From positions 1 through 39,199 of the forward strand of contig LWCA01000219.1 in the NCBI GenBank assembly GCA_001642005.1: 39,199 bases of DNA, in the 5' to 3' direction. This DNA comes from Intoshia linei (lineage: Eukaryota; Animalia; Orthonectida). Under the pieces are notes generated by a model. The model saw only the letters and a list, made by a program, of their open reading frames with translations, was not told the DNA's origin and did no database searches. Each line of letters opens with the position of its first letter. Positions within the stretch are counted from its first letter, which is position 1. This document shows positions 3,474 to 24,690 of the stretch, piece by piece. The position numbers were made by a program, and so were the translations under genes.

Positions 3474-6400
3474 ATGAAAAACAAGATTGAAAAGTCGAAT
3501 ATGGAATGTTTATCAAACGTAAAAAAAAATTTGAGAACTTCACCTATTAATACTAAAGGCAAACGTAAAAATGATGACAAGAATGATGAAAATCATCAAT
3601 ACGATCAAGATGTAAGAAATATTTCCATTGTTTTATTTTTTCATAGGTCGTTTTCGAAAAGAATGCATTTGAAAATATTTGTAATGGAAGTTTTGAAAAT
3701 GGAAATTTGAAATTGTAATTTTATCTCATGTTTTACGACGTTGACTATTTTTAGACCATTTGATATTGAAAATAGTGAATATCTTGAAAAAGGGACTGAA
3801 CTTTTATTTCAGGCGGTGGAAACTGGATGTGTTGCTTTAGTCAATGTATCATTTTTTAGAATTTAGTTATATTTTAATGTTTAGTCGTTGATTAATTTGA
3901 AAGTACCTGTAAATGTCAAATTGGAAGATCGTTGTTTATTGGTTGAAGCTGTATGTCGTGGATTTCATAATATTGTCGAGTTTCTTCTTAAAGCTGGAGC
4001 TGATGTTAATATTTTAACGAAAAGGAGTAATTTTACAAAATTTTAGACTGTATTTAACCTTGAAATTCTTTTTTTATTTTTTGCTTTTTTTTGGTTAATG
4101 GAGTTGATTTGATACTGGAATTTCATTTTTCTGTTTTTTAGGATATTTAAAAGTTTATATTTTTTATTTTATAAAAAAGCATTTTATTGTACTACAAATA
4201 GGGCTCGACAACGGGGCCGTGGAGAGGGGACCTACAATCATGAGGGATTTAATTTATTAATAGGTAATGTTGGAAAATTTCGATAACTAATACGAATTAC
4301 ATGGGTTATTTTTAATTTTTAGATAATGAACAATCGATTAATCAATGTATATAGGTCCAATCTTATATAATGGGCCAAAAATTTCCATCTGACCAGACTA
4401 CTTCTGCTGCTCCACGGCCCTGTCGACGAATTTCTAGTGTCGAATTTCATTTTTTATAAAAAATCTCATTCAAATTTTTGATATTTGTTTTTTACGATGG
4501 GGTTGTTTGATTCTTGACTCTTTTAAAAAAAATTAAAGTTGATTTACAAATTTTATTGATGTATATTGATTTATTTTTATATTTTAATTTTCAGGTCGAA
4601 CTGTGATGCATTTAGCTGTGATTGATAATGACGAAAAAATGGTTCGTATCTTATTACGATACTGTGTTTTAATTGATAAACCTGATGGTGACGGTCACAC
4701 TCCCCTAATGAAGGCTGTACTAAATAAAAATTTTGAATTGATGCAACTATTAATTCAAAACGGAGCAAAAGTTGTATCAACTGGAGATTTTAAAGAAACT
4801 CCGCTTTCTATCGCTGCTTATAAAGGTTATACAGATGTCGTGAAATTTTTGTTGATGTATATAAAAGATTGTAAATGCTTGGAATACGAATTATATAGTG
4901 CATTGATGGAAACATCAATGGATGGACACATTGAAGTAGCTAAATTGTTACTCGAGGCTGGATCTCCAGTAAATGTGATTATTGACGGATTTGAATCACC
5001 TCTCATGTTAGCAATTTGTTCTGGAAACAATAAATATGTTTCCATTTTATTGGACCATGGAGCTTTTATTGATGAAATTAATGAAGATGGGAACACTCCA
5101 TTGATGGAGGCATGTAGAGAAGGCAACGAATATGTGGTTTCCCTTTTGTTGAGTAGAGGGGCTGATACTGGCATACAGGCTGCAAATATTGGAGAAACTG
5201 CATTGACAATAGCTGCGTCTTCAGGGTATTTGGATATTGTTAGATTATTGGTTGCTATTGGAGCAGAAATTGATCAGTGTACGAATGATTATACTACGGC
5301 ACTAATGGAAGCCTGCCAGATGGACCATGTGGGTATAGGCAGGTTTTTATTAGAAAAAGGAGCAAACGTTAACGCCAAAACTAACACTCAAAGATGTGCA
5401 CTACACATGAGCGCAGATGGTGGTTCTGGTGAACTTATTCAACTGTTAATCAACTACAATGCAAATTTAGAAGATTTTGATGAATTTGGCACGAACCCTC
5501 TCATTATCGCTGCAAATTGTGGCAATTTAATAGTCGTAAAATTACTTGTAAAGAATGGGGTAAATGTGAATTCTTGTGAGATGGATGGTGGTATGACTGC
5601 TCTAATGGCTGCAGTTATTTCTGGTTATGAAAATGTTGTAGAATATTTAATCAGCGAAGGAGCTGACACTTCAGTGAAAATTAACGACAATCGAACGCTA
5701 CTTATTGAAGCTGTTAAAAACAATCATTTAAATATTGTCAAATTTTTATTAAACCTTGACGTAAAAAAAAATAACCAGCCACACTACTTGAATAAATCTG
5801 GAGAAATGTGTTGCGGTTGGGAAAACGAATCAAATCAAAATTCTGAGAATGGTTTGATTGTCGAAAATAAAGAAGACTCTAATAATGAAACTGAATTTCT
5901 TGTTGATGACTGTGATGAACTTGTAAATGCAAACAAAGCTTTTATGGGTCGGGTTCCATTAGTTTACAGATTAGCTGAACTGTCTTCAGAAAGTACTGAT
6001 CCGAGTAAATTTGACGAATTGATATTTAAAGTTATTAAACAAATCGAAGGTAATGGTGATTTGTTTGGAGTGCATAAAAATAAACGCAACAAATTTTTGG
6101 AAGAAATTAAACGAATCAAGGCATCGCATGCTCAGAAATTGCAAGAGAAAAACGACTTGGCAATTGAATTTTCGGGTGAATTGGAGCGACAAGACACTCT
6201 GTCTGGTACAGACATTGAAAACATTAAAAATGAAGCCATGTATCAATTGATCTCGAGTGAATTTTCTCAATTTCTAGAAGAATTTGATAGTTTTCAGTTG
6301 AACTCTAATGATCCAGAAAGTGAAAATTTAGAAAAAATTTTATCTGATGAAAATTCCCACCTGTTTAATAATGTTGTTAATAACGATTCACGAAATTCAA

Positions 6401-9400
6401 CTTCACCATTCTGTAATATTTGCTATCAACACCAAAAACTCCATAGACTACAGCAGCAGATTCACCTGCAGCTGAAACAACCAAATGTTTTAGAGATACA
6501 ACAAGAACAAGTTGAAAAACAGCTAAATCTAATCCGAGAGAAACGAATCCATGTTCAAAAACAATTCGGTCTTATCCAGGAACGACAGTGTATGTCATGT
6601 AGCGAAAAACCACAGTTGAAGCAAGACGATGAACCATTTTTTTGTGAAGAGGTTCTGCGTGATAAGGATGATAGACTTGTTAAAATCCAAATTGCTTGGA
6701 AAAAACAGTTACAGTTGATTAAAATTGTCCAAAATAATCATGAAATGAAAAAATTGCAATTGGTCAGTGAAGCACAAGTGATTAGAAACAAATTAAAATG
6801 CCAACAAAGGTATATCCACTCTAAAAAACTTTCTCAAAATTCTTGTAATCAAAACGAAACATGTAACCATACTTGTGTTAACAAATTAGGTTTTAATAAT
6901 TGCGCCCAACAGTACATACCATTTATTTCTAATTTACCACATATTCCAGAAATTAAACAAAACGATGTGTCCTTCATAAAACACTGCAAAAAATGTTACA
7001 ATGTAATTGCACACCCTATGGTGGAAATAAATGCCGAAACTAAAAGTACTCATGATACAGCTCTCACAATAGCTGCAACTGCTGGTAATGTTGATTTAGT
7101 TTCTATGCTCTTGAAATGTGACGCCAATATTGAACATCATGATAAAAAAGGATTCACCCCTTTAATTCTTTCCACCGCGGCTTGTAGTATTCCAGTTATT
7201 GAATTGTTATTGGATGCTGGAGCAAATATTAACGCGTATTGTGAAAAATCGCGCGATACTGCACTTTCTTTAGCTTGTTCTAGTGTTAAAAACGAAAAAA
7301 ACCGTTCCAAATTAGTCAAACTCATTTTGGATAGAGGAGCTGACATTGAACATCGTAATGTATCCGATTACACTCCTCTTTGTCTTGCAGCGTCTGATGG
7401 ACATTTAGATGTCATTAAAATTTTACTATCCTCTGGTGCTGAAATTAATGCTCGGACAGGTTCCAAATTGGGTATATCTCCTTTAATGTTGGCTTCAATG
7501 AATGGTCATGTCGAAGCTGTTGAATATTTTTTAAGCAAAGGAGCTGATATTCATGCTCAAATCGAAACTAATAAAAATACTGCTCTCACTCTTGCGTGCT
7601 TTCAAGGGCGTGCTGATGTTGTTGCCTTGTTGTTAAAAGCTAAACCAAACGTTGAGCACAGGTCTAAGGTAATTTATTTATTTTAAATTAATCTAAATTA
7701 GGCACCATGTTTTATTTTTGGAATTACCAACTTAATTGTTATATGAAATCAGCATTTCTTTCATTTTTTGACGTGACCACTTTATAAATGTATGCATTTT
7801 GTAATTAAATATGGGAATTTTTTTTAAATCAAATGCGGAAAATGTTTATCTTGTACGTATTTAACATCAAAGCTCATTTGATATTTAAATAGTCATTAGG
7901 CAGTAACGCGTAGGAATATAAATGAAATTTAAATTTTTTTGTTTTGAATATTCCAGGGTTTATCAACAAAAAAATTATGTGGAAAATTTTGCTTATTTTT
8001 TAAGGAGAATATTCTTAAATTCAACGATTTTTACTAAAAATAAAAATTTACTAACCCTTAAGGGAAAAATCCATAACTGTATATTATAGAAAATTTATAA
8101 ATCTAGAAAAATAGTAATTAAATTGTGTTTTGGATTTTCGTTACAAACTAGACAAATTACTATTTTTGATTTTTTATGAAATAATTGATATAATTTTATT
8201 AATCTTGCGTAATTATATATTTATATAAATTCACAATAAACCATACAATGCATAAAATATTTGGACTTTTGTTGTTTTGAAACTCAGTACTTTTAAAAAT
8301 TATTAATTTTGCCAATCAATGGAATGGTGAATTTGGAATATTTTCAAATTCGAGCGCGTATCCAAAAAACATCTGTTCGTCTATTCGTAGAACTAGGATG
8401 GTGCCAGAATTAATTGAAACTGAATTTTAAAATACAACAAAAACTTCATGTCTACAAAAAGTAAATTATAACCAATTTTTAGAATAGAAAATTTAATTAT
8501 CTACTACTTTCTGATAAAACTCGAATATTTGTCTTCCTCTAAATATTTTTTATTTATTATAAATAATATAATTTATTTTATATCTCCATCGAAAATCAGC
8601 AGCATTAATTTTATGTTATAAATTTCTCACGTAGTGTTACAAAAGCTGAAAATTCAAAAAATTTTTTAGAGTAATTTTACTAAAATTTGAAAAAAAGTAT
8701 TTACTGAGTTTTTACTTTGCAAAACTAAGTTAAACACACTACTACGTAGTACGTACCATACTGTTTGATAAATAAAATTATGAAGAAAGTCTGTAAAATA
8801 ATTTGTTAATATAAGGTTGTTTACATGTAAGTACTCTGTGAAAAAGTGATACCGTAACAATATTTTTTTTTGTTTTTCTAATTAACATTTAGGGTATGTC
8901 GCAAAGTTCTCTTTGTAAACTAGCCTTGGGTCATTAAAAAGTAGTATCCAAAGTGTAGTGTGAGTTGGTATAGTTTTTATTTAACTGTTAGCCTTTATGA
9001 CATGGATTACCAAAATTTAAAATTAATAACATGTCCCGTGATTAAAGAATAATTGATATGACAAATACATGCTTAGTTTGATTATACTGTTGTATTGTAT
9101 TAATTGTTATAATTAGAAATTGTTTTATTTATATTTTAAATAAAACAATTCAAATGCTATTTAACAAATGTAATTGCCTTTTTCCATAATTACTCATTTA
9201 TTACTTTATACAAAAAATACTCATTGTTTGAATTAAACAGTTGAACTTTAACTGTAATCTTTAATGTCTTTGTTTCCCTTTTGTATAAAACTATACATTT
9301 TCCGTTAAATTTATTTTAAATGTTTAATTAAAATATGATATTGCTATTAATAATTTAGCACAAATATTATCATAAACCAACATTTTTGTAAAAGTACTCT

Positions 9401-12400
9401 TATGTCGTTTGACTCAAACGGTTTGACTGATCAATGAGAATGAATCGTGATAAGAATAATCTTAATTTTTAGTTTGTTTTATTCTACAGATCTTTCGTTT
9501 CAATGAATATTTTATAACTTATGATTACACTAAGTATAGTTCCTTGGTATTGAGATTTGAAAGAAGCCACTACAGTTGTCCGAAAAATGGGCAGTAAAAG
9601 AATTATCCATGTGGAAATATAATAATAATCAACCATAAATTAATTGGTCGTCTTTTAATCGATAACTTATTTAGGTTGTGTCAAAATTTATAAATGATTT
9701 TGATTATTTCTTAATTAATTCTTATGTGTATACTTTCTCGTTTACTGTTGTAAGTTTGTTTGAACTAAAGTAATTTTAGAATTAACAGTGGCACCAATAT
9801 TTATATTGATTGTAATTGTTTCTTACGCACATTGTTCATTTTCATATAATAAACTGACTTAACTTTTTAAATGATATTGATCAATTTCGATTTATACATT
9901 AATAGGCGATTTTTATGCTTTTTTAGGTGTACAGCGGATTGTTTAGCTTTTTATTATCTGTCGCCAAAATGGTCCAGAATAATAACCAGGTTTGGACTAT
10001 AATCCCTGGTATATGAACATTTTCAGATTATGTAAAGACGATTGAACGACGAAAATTTTTATTTTTGTAGCGTTCCACAACGAAACAATTTGATCACCTT
10101 GCTTTATAAATGTGTAGTTTCTGATATAAGCGTTGTTAAGATTGTAGGAAATTGTGTAACTAAAATGACACACTACACTTTACGTTTGAAATAAGACTAA
10201 AATTTCGAAACTATAGAATGTTCATAAACCAATTTTCATTTGTAATAAAAATAAAATGTTGATCATGAAAATGAAAAATAAGCCTAAAAAAAATTTTACA
10301 AACGATGCGTAGTGTCACATAGTCCTAGCCACCTTTCCGAGGGTGTTAAATTGACATTTAAAATTTAATTCACAAAATAATTGTGAAATATTCAAGAATT
10401 AAAATGTTATATAAGTCAACTTGGAAAATTTACCCTATTTTACAAAAATTTTCGCCAAAGTTCCGAGTAGGGACTCGGTACGGTAGATTATGTACTCTTG
10501 GGCCGTGTATATGTCATTAAGTGTAATAATTTTAATCGGTTAATTACTTTTACTTTTGATTGGTTGATAGTCTCTATAATTTCTTATAAACATTATCTAA
10601 TAATTGTAGAGACGGACTAGAGACATATGACCCACCAAGAATCATTATGAGGCCTAATATTATATATTAATAGGTGATGTTAGATTTTTTTTGAAAAACC
10701 ACTGGATTACGGAATGGATATTAACTTATTATTTTTTTTAATGTATACGCTCCCACTTTTTTATCCCAGGTCATATATAGGGCATCTACAATTATGATTT
10801 TTATTAAAACTTTTTTAATGTTGTCTAGTAATTCTCTTTAATAAAAAATAAATTTTATAATTTATTACCGGTCCATTGTGAAAAAAGTGTGGGAACCTCT
10901 GATGTAATGTATTATACCCGCGTTATAATATAAATTTTTATTTTTATAACAATTTTTTACCCATATTTTTTTTTTTGCAGTTTTTTCATTATTTATTTAT
11001 TCATGATTACAATTTTAACATTATTATTGTTTCTTATTTCATTTTATAAATTAATTAAAACTGTTAGTTTTAACATAATTTTTTGAGTAAAGATTTTTTT
11101 TCATATTTGGTCTGCCAAGCAAATTGAATCTGACACTTCTATTATATAACCTTATATTTGTAATGAATGAGATTATTGTTTAAAATGTATAATGTATTTA
11201 CTCAAAACCGTTACTACTTTTTAATATTTTTTAATTGGGTTTCTACTGATTTTAAAAATATTTTCAATTTTAGTCTGGTTTAACACCACTTATGGAAGCA
11301 GCATCTGGTGGCTACGTTGACGTTTGTAAGCTCTTGGTTGAAAGTAATGCAGACGTGAATGCCATGCCCGTGAATTCATCTCGAGACACAGCATTAACAA
11401 TTGCCTGTGAAAAAGGACACACTAAATTTGTTGATGTGTTGATTCAAAAGTAATGTCATTTGTGAATATATTTTATATTTTTGTATAGCCACGCTTATTT
11501 GGACGTCAAAAATAAAAAAGGAAATTGTCCTTTATACTTAGCATGTATGGGAGGATTTTTTGAAATTGTAAAAATGTTGCTTAATGCTGGAGCAGACCCT
11601 GATTCAAATGATAACAGAAAAGTGTATTGTATTAGCGTAGCCCTGCGTAAAGGATTCGTTAATATTGTTCGGTATCTGGTTAAATTTGTGACTCAATTTC
11701 CTAGCGACATAAACCACAACCGATTCATGTCCAATATTGACAATTACGACGAGGTAATGCGAATATCATCTATATTAATATAATTATTAGGATCAATTGA
11801 GGCGATGTTTTACATGTCTGGAAGTAGTTAAGGCGGCTAAACATCAGCAAGAAACTCAAGCAAATCGAAACGCATTTCAATTGCTAATGGAAGAAGCCAA
11901 TGAAAAACACCGTGAAGAAATAAAACGTGGAGCTCTTGCTCGTAAGCGAGAAAAACGTAAAAACCGAAAAAACAAAATTAAAGCAAAAAGCCAAAAAGAT
12001 AAACTTGAACCGATAAAAAGTGAACCCGTGGAAAGCGACGAAGAGGTCCCCAAAATAAAATCTAAATGTTCCGTTGAAGAGGAGACTCAACCCATTAATG
12101 AGAAAGATGTGCAATTGCAAAACAACTGGTTCATCAAAAATAGCAATAAAAGCAATGATTCTGAGACTAATATTAAATTTGATACGAGCAATAATTCTAA
12201 TTACAAAGAAGTAGCTCTGTGCAGTGACAAAAAATCGATTTCAAAAAAAGAATCTGACAATATTGCTAATTCAACTGAAATTGAGTTTGAGACATACTTG
12301 AACGGGAATAATCGAAATTTCAGTTCAAATATTTCATTAACACAAGTTTATACAAATGGTAACGACAAAAACAAAAAAATTCCTCAAGTGAAACTATCCA

Positions 12401-15628: not shown

Positions 15629-18141
15629 TTAATAATCCGTTGACTCGTTTCCAGAATCTGCAGATATCCTTTCCAATGTGTCTAAATTTTTAATATAAAT
15701 AAAAATTCATTTAATTTTGACTACCCTCGAATTATTAAAATTAATGAAAAGTTTACTCAAAATCAGGACCATGCTCTGAATACACTAAATTAGTTTCTTT
15801 TGTTTTTACGTCTACTTAAAAATTGATAGCGGAATAAAAAGTTCAGATGTATAATAATTCGTAGCTTTTTCATGTGGAACCCCATTTGAAAAACAATATT
15901 TTATACAGTGAAACCTCTTTATAAACAAATTATCATGCTTTTAAAAATATATCAATCATATATAATTTATTACATTTTCACATGTCAACAGCTTACGTTG
16001 TATGGAATTTTTATGACACTTATCACGCTTTTTTGATAATCAAAAAACAAATTAGTTGTTAAATTTTCAAAATCGTTTTTTTATAAAGAGGTTTCACTGT
16101 ATTAAAAAAGATTACTATTGTAAAATATTTTGGTCATTCTTGAATGCACGCAGGCTGCAGTGATTCTTGCTAAATTTTTAATTAAAATTGACCAATAAAA
16201 ATTACCTTCAGAATCTCTTTCCCAACATTCAGTGATTGTTTGTTTTAAATAAGCAAGGTTCTAGTTTTAATAAATACCGATATATTTAAGAATAAAACCA
16301 TTAACTTTGAAGAAACTTTTACTGGAAACGGTGGCCGTAAGTTGTCTCTAACAATTTCGATTTTTATATTTTCGAATGAACCAGCTTTATTAGTTTCTTC
16401 TTCAAAGGGTAGTCGATATTTCGGCGGTTGACCAGCTACAAAATCATATGATTCATATTTAAATTGAATTACAATCATAAATATCAACTGTCATTCTACT
16501 CATTTCCCATAAGACCATTCCTAAAGCATAAATGTCAACTTGTTTAAGGGCTGTAATGCAATCGCTCAAATCAAGAGCTCTTTCAAATAGTTCTGGAGCC
16601 ATATATCGCTTTGTTCCAACCTATCAAAATAAAAATTAGATAAGAATGTCTATACTTCGTTAATTTGATATTCGGATTTGTCACTAGAAAATACTGCACC
16701 ATCGCTAATGTTATCGTTATATTTTCCGATGCAACTTAGGTTAAAATCACATAAAATACACTCTTCTTCTTTATTAATTAAAATGTTGCGACTATTTAAA
16801 TCTCGATGTGCGACGGGTGGTTTGTACGACGCTAAATTTATTAACAATTATTAAATTAAATGATAGTAATTTTTACATGTATAAAAGTTAAGTGTTTCTC
16901 TTAAATAAAAAGTAACTAATATACCAGATAAATTGATAGTTGAATGAAGAAAAGCGACGGCTGCACTAAGGGATTTCATGAGAATCTTTAATTTGGCAAC
17001 ATTAACTTGATTGTATTTTAGGTAATTTTGAAGAGATCCATGTGGATGATATTCGAAAACAATAACCTTGTACAAGGTTAATTTTGATTTCACATTATTA
17101 TATGTTGGATGAGGAGTAATTGACAAAGATGAAGCTGAAACAGTGCGTATGATGGACATTCTGGCGTTAAGTTCATACTTTTTATTTTCTTGTGCACTAA
17201 GTTTTGACTTGAAGTTATTTAGACTTGGTTGCGGTATGCACGGTCCAAAATTCCCATTAAAGTCTACTTTAGGAGAAATATCATCATTCGATAGTTCCAA
17301 GGAACCTGCATCAATGAATCGTAAAATGTAGCGACTGTTACTCATACACGGTAAATTATAAACACTAATCTCATTCAAAAAATGTTTGCAGTGTTGAGGT
17401 AGTATTAACTTGACTGCAACACTTTCTCCCTTATAATCAGCCGTCCAAACAGAACCAAATCGTCCATTAGCAACATTGCCTTGAAGTGTCAAATTTTTAT
17501 CGAAATTAACGAGTAATGCGTGTTCATCATCATTAGTTGAACTTTTTTTTTTAATCAAACAAATCTTTTTGTACTTTATCAAATAAAACAAAACACTCAC
17601 TACAAAAGCAAATAATAGCATCAACGTCATTAAAGATATCGTTATATGAATATAGGTAATCTCTAATTGAGTGTTTGTTTTTGTAGGGTTCACATTCATA
17701 TAAGAAAATATAGGCTTCGGTAGGATCGTTTTTTCTATCGAGTTGCAATAATTTTCAAAACAACAACATGTATAATACCAATGACTTTGTTTGTCGGAAT
17801 GAATCTCATGTGATTCTGCTGTGTCGCAGCGTTTACATACGCTGTTTTTATTTCCACAATATTTGAGAACCGGGTGATAATTAGAATTGTCATATTTCAA
17901 AAGCAATGAACAACCCACGTGTTTTGGACAATATATTACACTTTCATCAACGTTATATGTTTCATACAAACTCTTATTGTTGGATACGAAATTGTAATTT
18001 TTGAAATTGCATTTCAAAAAATCTTGTTCTAAAGTGCATCATCAATATTTATCAAAAATTTAACAATTTACCCATTCCATTTTGCGACAGTAGAGTTTTT
18101 ATTGCTGCAAAAATTATATTTAAGAGTAAAAAATTTTTCAT
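15629..18141 (-). CDS. BMPR2: TGF-beta family type II receptor Ser/Thr kinase, BMPR2/wishful thinking-like, multi-exon
   Basis: Exon 18141-18072 encodes a signal peptide (MKNFLLLNIIFAAIKTLLSQ). Exon 18028-16925 has a Cys-rich ectodomain ending CCFENYCN, a TM helix, no GS box, GRFGSVW and VAVK. Exon 16831-16656 has YKPPVAHRDLNSRNIL, the BMPR2/wit-type catalytic loop. Later exons encode VGTKRYMAPE...ALKQVDIYALGMVLWE, YRLPFEEE and ECWERDSE|ARITAAC. Exons below ~16116 and the stop at 15629-15631 are tentative. Confidence 0.85.
15906..16099. mobile_element. 194-bp Tc1/mariner (pogo/Tigger-like) MITE
   Basis: Perfect 20-bp TIRs CAGTGAAACCTCTTTATAAA / TTTATAAAGAGGTTTCACTG, flanked by TA duplications at 15904-15905 and 16100-16101. 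Confidence 0.9.
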
Positions 18142-19865: not shown

Positions 19866-20239
19866 GAAATTTTAGTCAAAATTTTTGAATGATTCATATA
19901 TAAACTATTCGATTATTTTGAAAATTTTGAATCTGAAAGTTTCACTGTGAAACCGTTAATTTAACTTTATTTAAAGAAAAACTAATTGAGAATTGTATAT
20001 TTTGAAAATGATGAATTTAGCAAAAAAAAGTAAATATTGATTCTATTTTGAATGTAACTATCTATCTATCGTCTTGTAGTCCAATCTGTAATAAATATGT
20101 AAAATAATGATTACTAATCATTGATTAGTCATAATTTATGACAACACAATAATCAACATAGAGATTTTATCACAAATGAAAAACCTTATCAACCAAAGTC
20201 GACAATTAAACTTGTATTAAACTTAAAACCTAAACTATA

Positions 20240-21303
20240 ATGAAATTTATGAATACAGCTAAAGATAATAAATTAAAAAGAAAAAATAGAGGAAGAACAT
20301 CCGAAAGTGAAATGGAGGAAATATTGATGCATCACTCGAAAGGTATCAGTAATACCTACATTTCAAGAATACTTAAAATACCAAGGTCAACTATTGGGAC
20401 TATTATAAAAAGAATGAAAGAAGGTAAACCTTTTCTACCTCAAGGAGGTGACAGAAGATCACTTCTTACTGAAGAAAATAAAAAACTTTTACAAAGTTGG
20501 GTCGAAAAAGACCCTACCGCAACATTAAAAGAATTGCAGCAAAAGACTATGGAATTGTTGGGAGTAAAATGCAGCATAACTACAATAAAACGATCCTTAA
20601 AAACTTTTGATTATACCATAAAGAAAATTACCATAAAAATTGAAGAAATAAACGGTCCGTCAACAATCAACGATAGATTTATATGTGCCGACACGTTTAA
20701 AAAAATTACCAGCGATTTGAATGCAAAACAATGTATATTTATAGATCTCATGAATTTTACTATAGAATTAGTCAATAAACGTGATGGTTTATTTACTACA
20801 GGAGCCGATATAAAAACGCGCCATATTTTTATTCTTGCTTCAATGAACAAATATGGTATTATATCATTTAAAATTTATGAAAAAGTAATTAACTTGCAAA
20901 ATTTACAGCATTTTTTATTGAATATGAAACATGAACTTGTAAGAAACGAAATTTACGATCCCATATTTATCGTGAGTCAGGTTGTGTCTCAAAAATATGA
21001 TGGATTGACGAAAATACTTGAAAATGAAAAAATAAAAACATTTTATATTCCTCGCCATTCTTTACATATACTTTATCCTATTGAACAATGTTTTATCAAA
21101 TGGAAAAAATACGTTCAGTGTGATAGAGTTCAGAATGAAAATCAACTGAATCAGTCCATGGAAAATGGATTTGTGGTAATATTTTATTATTTATATACAT
21201 TTTGATCGTTTTTTAGATTATTACGGAACAAGATTGTACAGAATATTATAATGCCATGTTGGACTATCTTGAGAAATGTTTAAATAAAAAAATTATCAAT
21301 TAG
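20240..21303 (+). CDS. IS630/Tc1-transposase-derived protein, copy 1 (~340 aa; candidate domesticated DNA-binding protein)
   Basis: Exon 20240-21175, a 41-nt GT-AG intron (21176-21216), and exon 21217-21303 (IITEQDCTEYYNAMLDYLEKCLNKKIIN*). Paired-like double HTH with GGDRRSLL linker. RNase H fold with FIDLMNF, FIVSQV (second Asp lost) and ILYPIEQCFIKWK. Confidence 0.85.
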
Positions 21304-22092
21304 TCATTTTTTGTTGTTTGTCTATTTTTTAAATTTATTAACAATTAAATTATTGTAAATTAATCTTGTACCACTTCATTACAGTTATTTAAGTATTGAC
21401 CATCATATTGGATTAAAAGCATTTTATTAATTCAGTGAATATTTTTTACTAACGATTTGTAAAAACTATAATTTTCTAATAAATTTTAAATCAAAAGCTT
21501 TTATCGTCGAAAGTCAAGCCATTTAAAATTTATATTTTATAGAATTAATGATATGACTGAACCTGAAGATTTGTTTGATCTGTCTGAATTCTGATTTGAC
21601 ACATGGATAGGACCGTGGAGAGTCAGCAGTAGGTCCTGACCAGATGGAAATTGAATGCCCAATAAATTTTGATCAAAAATGGAAACCTCTATATCAGGGG
21701 TGCACAACATTTCCACAAATTCAGCCACAATGCTACTTTTTTCATTGATACTACGGCCGCACAAAATTTACTTCGATATTGAGAAAGTTTACTCTGGACC
21801 TAAATTTTAGGTCTAATAAAATAGTTTTCTTTAAATTTTAATATCAGCAAGTTTTAATTCATAATTTTCAATTAAAATTAATCCTTAATTCACTCATATA
21901 AATTAATACCCCATCTGTCATTTATCTGAATTGGAATAAATAGCAATAGTAGGATTAATGCAGTGCTTTTCGTGGGGTGACTGGTTATCCCTAGGGGTGA
22001 ATACCAAAATTTAGATAATTGTAGACGAATCTAAAATATTCTGCATATTTCATTTTATCAGCCAATGTAATATAATATTATGAGAAAAAACC

Positions 22093-22370
22093 AAAATTTT
22101 ACCAACCCTTAAGGAAGAAATCTTTCTTTACCAATATTTTTTTTAAAAATCCATTTTTACCAAAGTTTTAAAATAGAAACTACCCTATCTGATTCCAAAA
22201 AAAAAAGCCTAATTTTACCAACCTATAATGAAAAAAATCGCATTTACCAATATTTTTATGAAAAATCCCATTTTACCAAACTTTTATATCAATAATTCCT
22301 CCAACTGATTCCATAAGATAACCCTGATTTTAAAAAAATTTGAAAAATCTGCTTTTACTAAATTTTTTTT
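22093..22370 (+). repeat. Degenerate tandem array of the ~29-bp TTTTACCAA...GGAAAAATCC unit
   Basis: TTTACCAA recurs at ~29-bp spacing with a higher-order ~115-bp duplication; same unit as 38735-38918. Confidence 0.65.
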
Positions 22371-23135
22371 AAAAAAACATTAATCGTTAATTTTTCGGTA
22401 AATCATTAATAATCATTGGACAAAAAAAAGTTCCATTAAAAACCGATGTGTTGATACATTAGAGTGGAAGACATAAAAAAAGATATCAGTGACTGCCTTG
22501 ATTTTGTGTGCCCTTCGCTAACATTTGAAAAACTGGGGCAAAGTCAAGAATGTAACTTTTTGATGAAAAGATTTTAAATAGACCTTGAATAAAATCTGAT
22601 TTAAACTTTTCTATTTGAAGTAAAATGATATATTGCATTATGATCAAATGTATTGCCTGCGGCCGCACATAAACGCTCTACATAATACTAAAATCAATCC
22701 TAAAATTTTAAAAACGTAAATTCTGGGGCGCGTTTTAACATTATTACTATTGTCGTAAATTTCAACCTCAGAAACTTACATCTTCATGGTCAAACCCCCA
22801 AATTACGCGTTTTTTCAAAAATGAAAAAAGTTACAGCATTTTATAAGACTTAAATTTTAGATATATTTTAAAATCATAAGCATTATTATAATTCAAAATC
22901 TCAAAAAGTTAAAATCAATTAAAAAGTTGGCATCGACAAAGCTAGCTACCGTTTTAAGAATAATTATTCAATCTCGATAGACACCAATCAAAAATACAAT
23001 AACATGTAACACTACTTCAATCTGAATTGATCTATTTAACTATCTCTAGTATAAATATAATCAACATGGATACTTTATCATAAACAAAAAACCTAACCAA
23101 CTAAATTCGACAGTTAAACTGGAAATAAAATTAAA

Positions 23136-24690
23136 ATGAGTGCAACGAACGAAAATACAGAGAAATTGAAGAGAAAATATAGGGGAAGAACATCAGAAAG
23201 TGAAATGGAACTAATATTATTGCACCACTCGAGAGGTATCAGCAATACCTACATTTCAAAAATACTGCAAATCCCAAGATCAACTGTTGTGACTAATATT
23301 AAAAGAATGAAAGAGGGTAAACCTTTTCTACCTCAAGGAGGTGACAGAAGATCACTACTCAATGATGAAAATAAAAAAACTTTACATGGTTGGGTTGAAA
23401 AAGACCCGACAATAACTTTAAAAGAATTACAACAAAAAACTCTGGAATTATTAGGCGTAAAGTGCAGTCTAAGTACAATAAAACGATCCTTAAAAACCTT
23501 TGATTATACCATAAAAGTAATTTCTACGAAACCCCAACAAATAGATAGTTCGTCTATAATTGACGATAGATTTGTATCTGCGGATTTATTTAAAAAAATG
23601 TCAGCTAATCTCGACATAAAACAGTTTATATTTATGGATTTGATGCAGTATAGTATAGAACTAGTAATTAATAAACGTGATGAAGCTAATACAGAATCTA
23701 CATATTCATCAAAATCTGATATAAAAATACGCCATATTTTTATTCTCGCCGGCATGAACAAATGTGGAATCATATCTTATAAAATTTATGAAGATCCAAT
23801 CGACATGGAAATTTTTCAAAATTTTCTAATGGAGTTGAAACGTGAACTTTTACAAACAGACATTTGCGATCCAATCTTTATCTTTAATGATGCCATCTCT
23901 CAAAAGTATCATGGAATAACTAAAATGGTGGAAGATGAAAAAATGAAAGTATTTTATGTTCCTCAACATTCATGGTACATTCTTCATCCTATTGAACAAT
24001 GCTTTATCAAATGGCGAAAGTACGTACAGCGTGATAGAGTCCAGAATGAAGGTCAATTGAATCAATCCATGGAAAATGGATTTGTGGTAATATTTTATTT
24101 CATAAAGCGTTTTTATATTTGTTTTTGCACTTTTCAACAAATATAAAAATACTGAAGTGTAGTGATATATCGTTATATTACTAATCGAGATTTGAATATA
24201 TACTTTTGATATAACTCACTTGTGATATCTAACGGCAGAGTGGTTATAGTTATATAATTGTATTCTACGGGGCTAGGTTCGGATCCCGATTTGGACATCT
24301 TTTTATTTAAGATGAACTTATCTGAGTTCGTCTCTGCTAATCGTTATAGTAATTGTTGGAATTTTACCACTATCACTATTTTATCCCATTGTTCCTTGAC
24401 CCGATTAATAATAACTTACTATATATTATATATTATATATAATATATATTTATTTATTATTTTGTATTGTATTTTTCAAATCTGGATTTATTTTTGATTA
24501 ATTTTCTGCTTTTGAGAGTTCTTGAGAATCAATTTTAATTGCATCATGTCCCAGAAGTTTTAAGATTGAGGTTTCCATAAAATTGTACTATTTAATATTT
24601 TAGATTATTACGGAACAAGATTGTAAAGAATATTATAATGAAATGTTGAAATACCTTGATAAAACTTTAAATAAAGAAATTATTGATTAG
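23136..24690 (+). CDS. IS630/Tc1-transposase-derived protein, copy 2 (~345 aa; tandem paralog of copy 1)
   Basis: Exon 23136-24086, a 517-nt GT-AG intron (24087-24603) at the same codon position as copy 1 (ENGFV|IITEQDC), and exon 24604-24690 (IITEQDCKEYYNEMLKYLDKTLNKEIID*). Motifs FMDLMQY, FIFNDA and ILHPIEQCFIKWRK. Confidence 0.85.
24227..24298 (+). pseudogene. Degenerate tRNA-like sequence (tRNA pseudogene or tRNA-derived SINE head) in the intron of transposase-derived copy 2
   Basis: Pol III A-box-like CGGCAGAGTGGTTA (24233-24246) and B-box-like GGTTCGGATCCC (24276-24287) at tRNA spacing. Partial acceptor stem (ATCTAA/TTGGAC) and a following T-run. The anticodon arm does not fold. Confidence 0.45.

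What the first reader, a model, noticed from the sequence alone, without database searches (positions are those of the whole stretch)
20240..24690. Tandem pair of intron-bearing, apparently domesticated IS630/Tc1 transposase genes (candidate lineage-specific paired-like DNA-binding factors)
Seen: two intact ~340-aa ORFs, whereas every other TE coding relic in the window is broken. Both have a GT-AG intron at the identical codon (ENGFV|IITEQDC; 41 vs 517 nt) and I found no TA-flanked TIRs around either. The N-terminal double-HTH is 100/118 identical by hand count with many third-position changes, while the central RNase H region is only roughly half identical. Known: active IS630/Tc1 enzymes use FxDE...xxDN(A/V)xxH...P(P)YSPxLNPIE. 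Here these read FIDL/FMDL, FIVSQV/FIFNDA and PRHSLHILYPIE/PQHSWYILHPIE, so the second Asp and the SPxLN motif are degraded. Copy 2 has a D one residue downstream that is 34 residues from the E, so residual activity is not excluded. Inference: a transposase was co-opted as a host DNA-binding protein, as with the Pax paired domain or CENP-B, then duplicated and kept under purifying selection, possibly to regulate genes or repress TEs.
Basis: partly seen in the sequence, partly recalled or inferred. Interest (0 to 1): 0.85.

Follow-up and report, generated by a model that had tools for sequence, protein, structure and literature searches.

The report
Tamed Tc1-like transposase gene pair
Two neighbouring genes of the parasitic worm Intoshia linei descend from a jumping-gene enzyme that has lost its cutting residues and mobile ends yet has been kept intact by selection, most likely as a DNA-binding protein; such taming is a known process, so this is a new example and not a new principle.

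Summary
The window is Intoshia linei contig C1393. The two genes are the annotated hypothetical proteins A3Q56_02389 (340 aa) and A3Q56_02390 (345 aa). They are 69% identical, and each has one GT-AG intron at the same codon (41 and 517 nt).

They belong to a Tc1-like DD34E transposase family. The closest relative, at 32% identity, sits in a Marteilia element with 49-nt inverted ends.

- **Not mobile:** the pair has no inverted ends and no other copy in the 41.6-Mb assembly.
- **Degraded catalytic core:** they keep only 19 and 21 of 40 family-conserved positions. The second catalytic Asp is N in copy 2 and S in copy 1. Most losses are shared, so they predate the duplication.
- **Under selection:** dN/dS is 0.14-0.39 overall and lowest in the paired-like HTH domain. 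Neutral drift over the same divergence would give about 12 stop codons per copy.
- **Repeats avoid the exons:** dispersed repeats landed in the long intron and in the spacer only.

I read this as a domesticated, tandemly duplicated, catalytically degenerate transposase kept as a DNA-binding protein (0.7).

The intron itself is weak evidence, since decayed transposons in this genome also carry mini-introns. Earlier notes of this scan report other transposase-derived genes elsewhere in this genome, but not this pair.

The parts
20149..20239 (+). Copy 1: conserved block directly upstream of the ATG (putative promoter or 5'UTR)
   Evidence: 79 nt align to 23057-23135 at 81% identity, score 83 against a shuffled maximum of 40. 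Its 19% difference is lower than the 38% seen at four-fold degenerate sites. It shows no similarity to transposon ends.
20240..21175 (+). Copy 1 exon 1 (312 codons) of A3Q56_02389: PAI+RED helix-turn-helix domain, linker, and most of the degenerate DDE/RNase H-like domain
   Evidence: Open frame. Weak Pfam matches to HTH_SB, HTH_Tnp_Tc3_2 and DDE_3, all below the curated cut-offs. Identical to P0002.
21176..21216 (+). Copy 1 intron, 41 nt, GT..AG, phase 0
   Evidence: Read from the sequence. Removing it restores colinearity with the family's C-terminal helix (G-x-x-x-I-T-x-x-D-C). The size is ordinary for this host, whose median intron is 57 bp (PMC6543705).
21217..21303 (+). Copy 1 exon 2 (28 codons plus stop): last helix of the catalytic domain
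   Evidence: 87% identical in DNA to 24598-24690 and aligns to the C-termini of the homologs.
21688..22680 (.). Dispersed repeat of about 1 kb inserted in the spacer between the two genes
   Evidence: At least 40 scored copies at 81-89% identity elsewhere in the assembly, from 2010 first-look candidates.
23057..23135 (+). Copy 2: conserved block directly upstream of the ATG
   Evidence: Partner of 20149-20227.
23136..24086 (+). Copy 2 exon 1 (317 codons) of A3Q56_02390. HTH helices lie at about aa 21-59 and 77-120 and the RNase H-like core from about aa 160. D168, N251/D252 and E287 occupy the catalytic sites.
   Evidence: Open frame, Pfam, AlphaFold2 model with mean pLDDT 88.7, and Foldseek hits to Mos1, Sleeping Beauty and Metnase.
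24087..24603 (+). Copy 2 intron, 517 nt, GT..AG, same position and phase as in copy 1
   Evidence: The first 13 and last 6 intron bases still align with copy 1.
24158..24346 (.). Dispersed repeat of about 190 bp inside the copy 2 intron, which accounts for part of its extra length
   Evidence: 40 copies at 84-92% identity elsewhere in the assembly, from 147 first-look candidates. ARAGORN finds no tRNA there.
24604..24690 (+). Copy 2 exon 2 (28 codons plus stop)

Best explanation
These are two host genes of Intoshia linei that descend from one immobilised copy of a Tc1-like DD34E transposon.

**Inferred order of events.**
1. The copy lost its inverted ends.
2. Its catalytic core decayed. The Glu next to the first Asp, the second Asp with its Asn and His neighbours, and the YSPxLN motif were all replaced.
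3. It acquired an intron of host size.
4. It was then duplicated in tandem together with about 90 nt of upstream sequence.

**State since the duplication.** Both copies have been held under purifying selection. Selection is strongest on the bipartite paired-like (PAI+RED) helix-turn-helix domain and weaker, but real, on the folded and catalytically degenerate RNase H-like domain.

**Most likely mode of action (inferred, not shown).** The products are probably nuclear sequence-specific DNA-binding proteins. They would recognise DNA through the two HTH subdomains and their basic linker. The dead catalytic domain would serve as a structural or oligomerisation module. They would not cut or move DNA. 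Their targets are unknown. The ends of related transposons or MITEs are one candidate.
For: **Homology and fold.**
- A profile search finds 1059 homologs with canonical D-E, D-N-x-x-x-H and P-P-Y-S-P-x-L-N-P-I-E motifs.
- The AlphaFold2 model (pLDDT 88.7) matches full-length Mos1 and the Sleeping Beauty and Metnase catalytic domains.

**Degeneration specific to the catalytic domain.**
- The pair keeps 19 and 21 of 40 columns that are at least 80% conserved. These are the lowest values among 76 sequences, and most losses are shared by both copies.
- The DDE_3 score is 25-27 bits, against 86-99 bits in relatives, while the HTH scores are similar.
- The ratio of catalytic to DNA-binding-domain identity to the family is 0.86 and 0.93, against a median of 1.23.

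**Selection.**
- dN/dS is 0.14-0.39 overall, 0.12-0.29 for the HTH domain and 0.17-0.38 for the rest. Every bootstrap replicate is below 1.
- Neutral simulation at matched divergence gives about 12.6 stops per copy and 0 of 4000 open frames.

**Immobility.**
- No TIRs are present, and these are the only two copies in the assembly.
- The same methods find a 49-nt TIR pair around the nearest relative and TA-flanked TIRs in a relic and in a MITE family.

**Other support.**
- Repeats were inserted only in the intron and the spacer.
- The tree shows a long stem (1.83) followed by short tips (0.25 and 0.28).
Against: - No RNA evidence was obtained.
- No ortholog or synteny test was possible, because no other orthonectid data were reachable.
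- Selection is inferred from a single paralog pair.
- Copy 2 keeps an Asp (D252) with the canonical 34-residue spacing to the Glu, so residual catalysis is not excluded.
- Introns also occur in decayed transposon copies of this genome, so the intron does not separate gene from transposon.
- DNA binding and nuclear localisation are inferred from homology only.
Confidence: 0.7

Rival explanations
1. The pair is a domesticated, transposon-directed repressor. It would bind the ends of the cognate Tc1-like family, including the roughly 200-bp MITEs with CAGTGAAACC... ends. It would block or poison transposition as a dominant-negative, catalytically dead transposase, and would not regulate host genes.
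For: - The DNA-binding domain is kept, the catalysis is dead and the dimer-forming fold is kept.
- The genome holds a MITE family with TA duplications, about 74 end matches against 9 in the control, and 92% mean pairwise identity. It is therefore much younger than the gene duplication.
- The relic with those ends groups near the pair in the tree.
Against: - The pair's DNA-binding domain is only about 30% identical to that of the relics.
- The tree grouping is weak (SH-aLRT 85, quick tree only).
- No TIR-like site lies near the pair.
- Nothing tests binding.
Confidence: 0.15
2. The pair is an immobile but still active transposase source. Copy 2 would use the displaced Asp252, Asp168 and Glu287 to mobilise the MITE family in trans. 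Copy 1 would be a dead partner.
For: - D252 lies 34 residues before E287.
- The MITEs are young, while every canonical transposase copy found is fragmentary or broken.
Against: - The canonical Asp column holds N251. In the model D252 starts the following helix.
- Eight further nearly invariant catalytic-domain residues are replaced.
- Copy 1 has no Asp at either position.
- The MITE ends belong to a relic only about 30% identical to the pair.
Confidence: 0.06
3. These are ordinary decaying transposon remnants, or annotation artefacts, whose frames are open by chance and which are not expressed.
For: - There is no RNA evidence.
- Two-copy transposase-like loci without TIRs were judged to be pseudogenes in Drosophila when synteny and expression were lacking (PMC13548663).
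Against: - Four-fold sites differ at 38%, yet both 340-aa frames are open. Neutral simulation gives 0 of 4000.
- dN/dS is far below 1.
- The upstream block is conserved.
- Repeats avoid the exons.
Confidence: 0.05
4. The pair is still a mobile element whose ends were not recognised, for example very short or atypical TIRs.
For: The search for ends relied on inverted-repeat similarity in AT-rich DNA, where short ends are hard to see.
Against: - The shared DNA stops at the stop codon and 91 nt upstream of the ATG.
- The arrangement is tandem and in the same orientation.
- There are only two copies.
- The catalytic losses are shared.
Confidence: 0.03

Closest known systems
SETMAR/Metnase transposase domain (domesticated Hsmar1 mariner, primates)
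   Same: It is a full-length Tc1/mariner transposase module kept by the host. It combines a paired-like HTH domain with an RNase H-like domain that has an altered catalytic triad. It is immobile and lacks its own TIRs, while related MITE ends persist in the genome. The Metnase catalytic domain is a structural match to the model. The biology quoted here is from general knowledge.
   Different: SETMAR is fused to a SET methyltransferase domain and alters the third catalytic residue. Here there is no fusion, the loss is at the second Asp together with many neighbouring residues, and the gene is duplicated in tandem. The sequence family is Tc1-like DD34E, not mariner.
Drosophila Tc1/mariner-derived genes: CG4570, cag, and a recently domesticated gene of the obscura group (PMC13548663)
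   Same: These are Tc1/mariner transposases co-opted through their DNA-binding module. They were identified by low copy number, absence of TIRs and TSDs, and purifying selection.
   Different: Those cases are backed by orthologs in conserved synteny and by expression data, both of which are missing here. The Intoshia pair keeps the whole folded catalytic domain, and that domain is under constraint.
Tc1-like DD34E element of the Marteilia pararefringens MAG (protein MEN2497738, P0003)
   Same: It is the closest sequence relative: 32% identity, profile E-value 7e-58, same length and same domain order.
   Different: It is a real transposon. It has a single uninterrupted ORF, 49-nt TIRs that are 94% complementary, a canonical DDE and a DDE_3 score of 99.5 bits.
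Pogo-derived CENP-B and the Pax paired domain
   Same: Both are transposase HTH modules reused as host DNA-binding domains (general knowledge).
   Different: They belong to different lineages. No Pfam PAX or CENP-B family match was found at E up to 1. They are analogies, not relatives.

Membership tests
Tc1/mariner (IS630-Tc1-mariner) transposases, by homology | N-terminal bipartite PAI+RED helix-turn-helix DNA-binding domain | tested here: met
   HTH_SB and HTH_Tnp_Tc3_2 match at E about 1e-6 to 1e-7, below the Pfam cut-offs. Sleeping Beauty PAI and RED chains are the best PDB sequence matches. The model has six helices at aa 21-120.
Tc1/mariner (IS630-Tc1-mariner) transposases, by homology | RNase H-like DDE catalytic fold | tested here: met
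   Foldseek matches Mos1 at E = 3e-13, the Sleeping Beauty catalytic domain at 1e-9 and Metnase at 1e-8.
Active Tc1/mariner transposon | Intact DD34E catalytic triad with the conserved DE, DNxxxH and YSPxLNPIE surroundings | tested here: not met
   The first Asp and the Glu are kept. The second Asp column holds N in copy 2 and S in copy 1. E->L, N->D/Q, H->Q, Y->H, P->Y/H and N->H/Y replacements follow. The pair keeps 19 and 21 of 40 conserved columns.
Active Tc1/mariner transposon | Terminal inverted repeats flanked by a TA target duplication | tested here: not met
   Flank against reverse-complement flank scores at the shuffled median. No match to the family's TIR lies within 6 mismatches of 24. 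The positive controls were found.
Active Tc1/mariner transposon | Several dispersed similar copies | tested here: not met
   Only the two tandem copies exist. The next best match is 34% identical and broken.
Domesticated transposase gene (criteria of PMC13548663) | Low copy number, no TIRs or TSDs, intact frame | tested here: met
Domesticated transposase gene (criteria of PMC13548663) | Purifying selection | tested here: met
   Paralog dN/dS is 0.14-0.39 by four methods and every bootstrap is below 1. Neutral simulation keeps 0 of 4000 frames open. The estimate rests on one paralog pair, not on orthologs.
Domesticated transposase gene (criteria of PMC13548663) | Orthologs in conserved synteny in related species | not testable with these tools
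   No other orthonectid genome or proteome is reachable. Protein searches return only the two Intoshia linei records above 35% identity.
Domesticated transposase gene (criteria of PMC13548663) | Expression with reads that fit the exon-intron model | not tested
The three runs holding 33-40% of the words are of unknown kind.
Pax paired-domain transcription factors | Match to the PAX paired-box family | tested here: not met
   No PAX family appears among the Pfam matches at E up to 1.

The most novel reading that the evidence does not exclude
The pair may be the trans-acting partner of the young CAGTGAAACC-ended MITE family of about 200 bp. That would make a SETMAR/MADE1-like network in a 41.6-Mb animal genome. 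One version has the pair binding those ends, scattered across the genome, to silence or wire nearby genes. The other has copy 2 still cutting through its displaced Asp252, with copy 1 as a dead partner, in the manner of active/dead domesticated transposase pairs in ciliates.
Probability: 0.1. Interest if true: 0.7.

Novelty: new member of a known kind. Interest (0 to 1): 0.4.

Why it matters
Orthonectids have one of the smallest and most gene-poor animal genomes. A transposase-derived gene that was duplicated and kept there suggests a real host function.

Earlier notes of this scan report other transposase-derived genes in the same genome. Together with those, the pair points to repeated co-option of transposase DNA-binding modules in a lineage that has lost many conventional regulators.

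The pair also offers a clean natural experiment. One paralog has no second Asp at all and the other has it shifted by one residue. This allows a test of how much of the Tc1/mariner active site can be lost before catalysis ends.

It does not open a new category, because Tc1/mariner domestication is already documented.

Tried and rejected
- **RNA check.** No letters of 24411-24476 were sent to any search tool afterwards.
- **Sequencing runs.** The look-up of sequencing runs gave three runs of unknown kind from one study, holding 33-40% of the words. This cannot be interpreted without laying reads.
- **Complex prediction.** Complex prediction of the two paralogs gave no verdict (score 0.01). It is evidence neither for nor against binding.
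- **Word-based protein search.** It returned only the two proteins themselves.
- **TIR searches.** Generic inverted repeats, flank against reverse-complement flank and the family-specific end motif found nothing at the pair.
- **Inverted 'TTGGTAAA...TTTACCAA' matches.** Those around copy 1 belong to the repeat-rich spacer and are absent around copy 2, so I rejected them as ends.
- **Upstream block.** Compared with the transposon and MITE ends, the 79-nt block shows no similarity.
- **tRNA-like stretch.** ARAGORN finds no tRNA in the copy 2 intron.
- **Neighbouring genes.** Pfam scans of neighbouring ORFs did not confirm SoxD.
- **Tree.** The careful maximum-likelihood tree did not finish in 300 s, so only the quick tree is reported.
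Full report
**What is in the sequence**

Two long open frames lie on the + strand at 20240-21205 and 23136-24146. Each is interrupted by a GT..AG intron after the same codons, G-F-V | I-I-T.
- Copy 1: exon 1 is 20240-21175, the intron 21176-21216 (41 nt) and exon 2 21217-21303.
- Copy 2: exon 1 is 23136-24086, the intron 24087-24603 (517 nt) and exon 2 24604-24690.

The first exons are 67% identical as protein. Over the whole spliced length, 234 of 337 aligned codons are identical. The figures are 95/115 in the HTH region, and 30/59 and 39/70 in the central region.

At the DNA level the shared unit runs from about 91 nt upstream of the ATG to the stop codon. The coding part is 79% identical, exon 2 is 87% identical and a 79-nt upstream block is 81% identical. 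Nothing is shared downstream of the stop.

**How the spliced models were handled**

Searches used exon references or the database's own records P0001 and P0002, which equal the spliced models. Joined codon strings existed only inside local scripts, for dN/dS and for the neutral simulation.

**Where it comes from**

The window is contig C1393 of a 41.6-Mb assembly in 3520 contigs. The two products are the NCBI records A3Q56_02389 (340 aa) and A3Q56_02390 (345 aa) of Intoshia linei. They are annotated only as hypothetical proteins, and by UniRef as Tc1-like DDE domain proteins. A 41-nt intron is ordinary for this host, whose median intron is 57 bp (PMC6543705).

**Family**

- Pfam gives weak matches to HTH_SB, HTH_Tnp_Tc3_2 and DDE_3, all below the curated cut-offs.
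- A profile of the two proteins finds 1059 homologs among 1.84 billion representatives, 30 of them below 1e-30.
- Their consensus carries the canonical motifs F-x-D-E-V-G-F, F-I-M-D-N-V-x-F-H-K and L-P-P-Y-S-P-F-L-N-P-I-E-N, with 34 residues between the second Asp and the Glu. This is a Tc1-like DD34E family.
- The closest relative, at 32% identity, is a protein of a Marteilia pararefringens MAG. It lies in a real transposon with a single ORF flanked by 49-nt inverted repeats that are 94% complementary.
- An AlphaFold2 model of copy 2 (mean pLDDT 88.7) has six N-terminal helices and an RNase H-like core.
- Its best structural matches are full-length Mos1 transposase (E = 3e-13), the Sleeping Beauty catalytic domain and the Metnase/SETMAR transposase domain.
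- Sleeping Beauty PAI and RED subdomains are also the best sequence matches in the PDB.

**Catalytic degeneration**

Forty alignment columns are at least 80% conserved in 74 homologs. Copy 2 keeps 19 of them and copy 1 keeps 21. These are the lowest values of all 76 rows. One other row keeps 23, and all the rest keep 31-40.

The first Asp (D168) and the Glu (E287) remain. The following are lost:
- the Glu next to the first Asp, now Leu;
- a Gly and an Arg that follow it;
- the G-R...G stretch;
- an Asn in strand 2, now His;
- the second Asp, now N251 in copy 2 and S246 in copy 1;
- the Asn after it, now D252 in copy 2 and Q247 in copy 1;
- the His, now Gln in both copies;
- most of P-Y-S-P-x-L-N.

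Most of these losses affect both copies, and several give the same new residue. They therefore very probably predate the duplication.

In the alignment it occupies the Asn column, and in the model it opens the helix after strand 247-251.

The degeneration is domain-specific.
- DDE_3 scores 25-27 bits in the pair against 86-99 bits in four relatives, while the HTH scores are alike.
- In typical members the catalytic part is more conserved than the DNA-binding part (median ratio 1.23). In the pair the ratio is 0.86 and 0.93.

**Selection**

| Region | NG86 | LWL85 | YN00 | ML |
|---|---|---|---|---|
| Whole protein | 0.31 | 0.39 | 0.14 | 0.20 |
| HTH domain | 0.18 | 0.29 | 0.12 | 0.14 |
| Linker plus catalytic part | 0.38 | 0.38 | 0.19 | 0.17 |

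These are dN/dS values between the paralogs. No bootstrap replicate reaches 1.

Synonymous divergence is large, at 0.4-1.2 depending on the method, and 22 of 58 four-fold sites differ. The duplication is therefore old, and recent gene conversion does not explain the similarity.

I simulated neutral substitution at half that divergence per lineage. It gives about 12.6 stop codons per copy and no open frame in 4000 trials.

The 79-nt upstream block differs at 19% of its sites, about half the four-fold rate. This suggests a constrained promoter or 5'UTR.

**Immobility**

- Each 5' flank against the reverse complement of its 3' flank scores at the shuffled median.
- The generic inverted-repeat scan finds nothing common to both copies.
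- Searching the assembly with copy 2 finds only the two copies. The next best match is 34% identical and broken.
- Searching with the canonical Marteilia protein again returns the pair as the only full-length uninterrupted matches among 49.

The methods can detect ends where they exist. They find the Marteilia TIRs. They also find a degraded TIR pair starting TA|CAGTGAAACC... around relic C1303.

That end motif occurs 74 times in the assembly, against 9 for the reversed control. It defines a MITE family of about 200 bp with TA duplications and 92% mean pairwise identity in 19 copies. One MITE copy lies in the window at 15906-16099. None lies near the pair.

Dispersed repeats did land in this locus, but only outside the exons.
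- A repeat of about 190 bp lies in the copy 2 intron at about 24158-24346, with 40 other copies.
- A repeat of about 1 kb lies in the spacer at about 21688-22680.

The first of these explains part of the difference in intron length.

**The intron is weak evidence**

Relics of the family in this genome keep canonical M-D-N-A-R-I-H-H-Y and Y-L-P-P-Y-S-P-F-L-N-P-I-E-N motifs. They carry a 24-42-nt insert with stops right after H-H-Y-K-G, which looks like a read-through mini-intron. They are uninterrupted at the G-F-V|I-I-T position.

Transposons in this genome can therefore carry host-sized introns, which earlier first-reader notes also suggest. What does count is this:
- the pair's intron is at a different site from the relics' insert;
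- both paralogs share it;
- it must be removed to restore colinearity with the family's last helix.

**Origin**

A quick maximum-likelihood tree places the pair (support 100) on a stem of 1.83 substitutions per site, with tips of only 0.25 and 0.28. The pair falls in a weakly supported group (85) with the Marteilia protein, one metagenomic protein and three Intoshia relics.

A long stem followed by short tips is what a burst of change at co-option followed by constraint would produce. The careful tree did not finish, so the placement is provisional.

**Mechanism**

*Shown:* homology, fold, loss of catalytic residues, absence of ends, copy number of two, and purifying selection on both domains.

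*Inferred:*
- The proteins bind DNA through the PAI and RED helix-turn-helix subdomains and the conserved basic stretches. These are K-L-K-R-K-x-R-G-R at the N-terminus and G-G-D-R-R in the linker, both identical in the two copies.
- The degenerate RNase H-like domain survives as a structural or oligomerisation module.
- The proteins act in the nucleus on specific sites.

Whether those sites are transposon ends or host regulatory DNA is open. A heteromer of the two paralogs is plausible for a family that works as dimers, but the complex prediction gave no verdict.

**Not tested**

- **Expression and splicing.** Earlier follow-up notes of this scan say that transcripts of other Intoshia genes were seen, so RNA data probably exist.
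- **Orthologs and synteny.** No other orthonectid was reachable.
- **Binding and catalysis.** Neither was tested.

**Comparison with what is known, and verdict**

Domestication of Tc1/mariner transposases is documented. SETMAR is the classic case, and five genes in Drosophila have been described, with explicit criteria (PMC13548663). The Intoshia pair meets the criteria on copy number, absence of ends, intact frame and selection. It lacks the evidence on synteny and expression.

It is a new, lineage-specific member of a known kind. It is notable for being a full-length, tandemly duplicated pair in a highly reduced animal genome. My confidence that it is a domesticated, non-mobile gene pair is about 0.7. 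I score interest at 0.4.

Noticed in passing
window 15906-16099: A 194-bp MITE with perfect CAGTGAAACCTCTTTATA ends and TA flanks. It belongs to a family with about 74 end matches in the assembly and 92% mean pairwise identity. The same ends flank a decayed Tc1-like copy of about 1.8 kb on contig C1303 (L013/L034).
   Followed up: yes
window 21688-22680: A high-copy dispersed repeat of about 1 kb (at least 40 copies at 81-89% identity, 2010 first-look candidates). It lies between the two genes and was not classified. Arrays of a TTTACCAA-containing 28-nt unit lie at 22212-22287.
   Followed up: partly
window 24158-24346: A dispersed repeat of about 190 bp (40 copies at 84-92% identity) inside the copy 2 intron. 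It contains a stretch that resembles a tRNA T-arm, but ARAGORN calls no tRNA. It may be a SINE or a MITE.
   Followed up: partly
G000 contigs C2638:1652-2014, C3108:35843-36115, C1574:47056-47349 (L005, L006, L012): Open frames of 124-184 aa that match only the HTH half of the transposase (30-40% identity) and contain no stops. They could be further genes built from the DNA-binding domain alone.
   Followed up: no
L004 2190-2235, L008 1650-1685, L014 about 1680-1700: Decayed Tc1-like relics carry a 24-42-nt insert with stops directly after the H-H-Y-K-G motif, at the same place in several copies. This is consistent with a mini-intron that was part of the transposon itself.
   Followed up: partly
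L015 3765-5194 (Marteilia pararefringens MAG contig JBCNYB010000265): An apparently intact Tc1-like element of about 1.43 kb. It has 49-nt TIRs that contain 21-nt direct subrepeats, and a 347-aa canonical DD34E transposase. It lies next to an AMP-binding enzyme gene.
   Followed up: partly
window 4603-7686 and 11481-11783: A long ankyrin-repeat ORF (1027 aa open frame) and a further ankyrin exon upstream of the pair. A weak kinase-domain match (at or below Pfam's cut-offs) lies on the minus-strand ORF 16851-18017.
   Followed up: no
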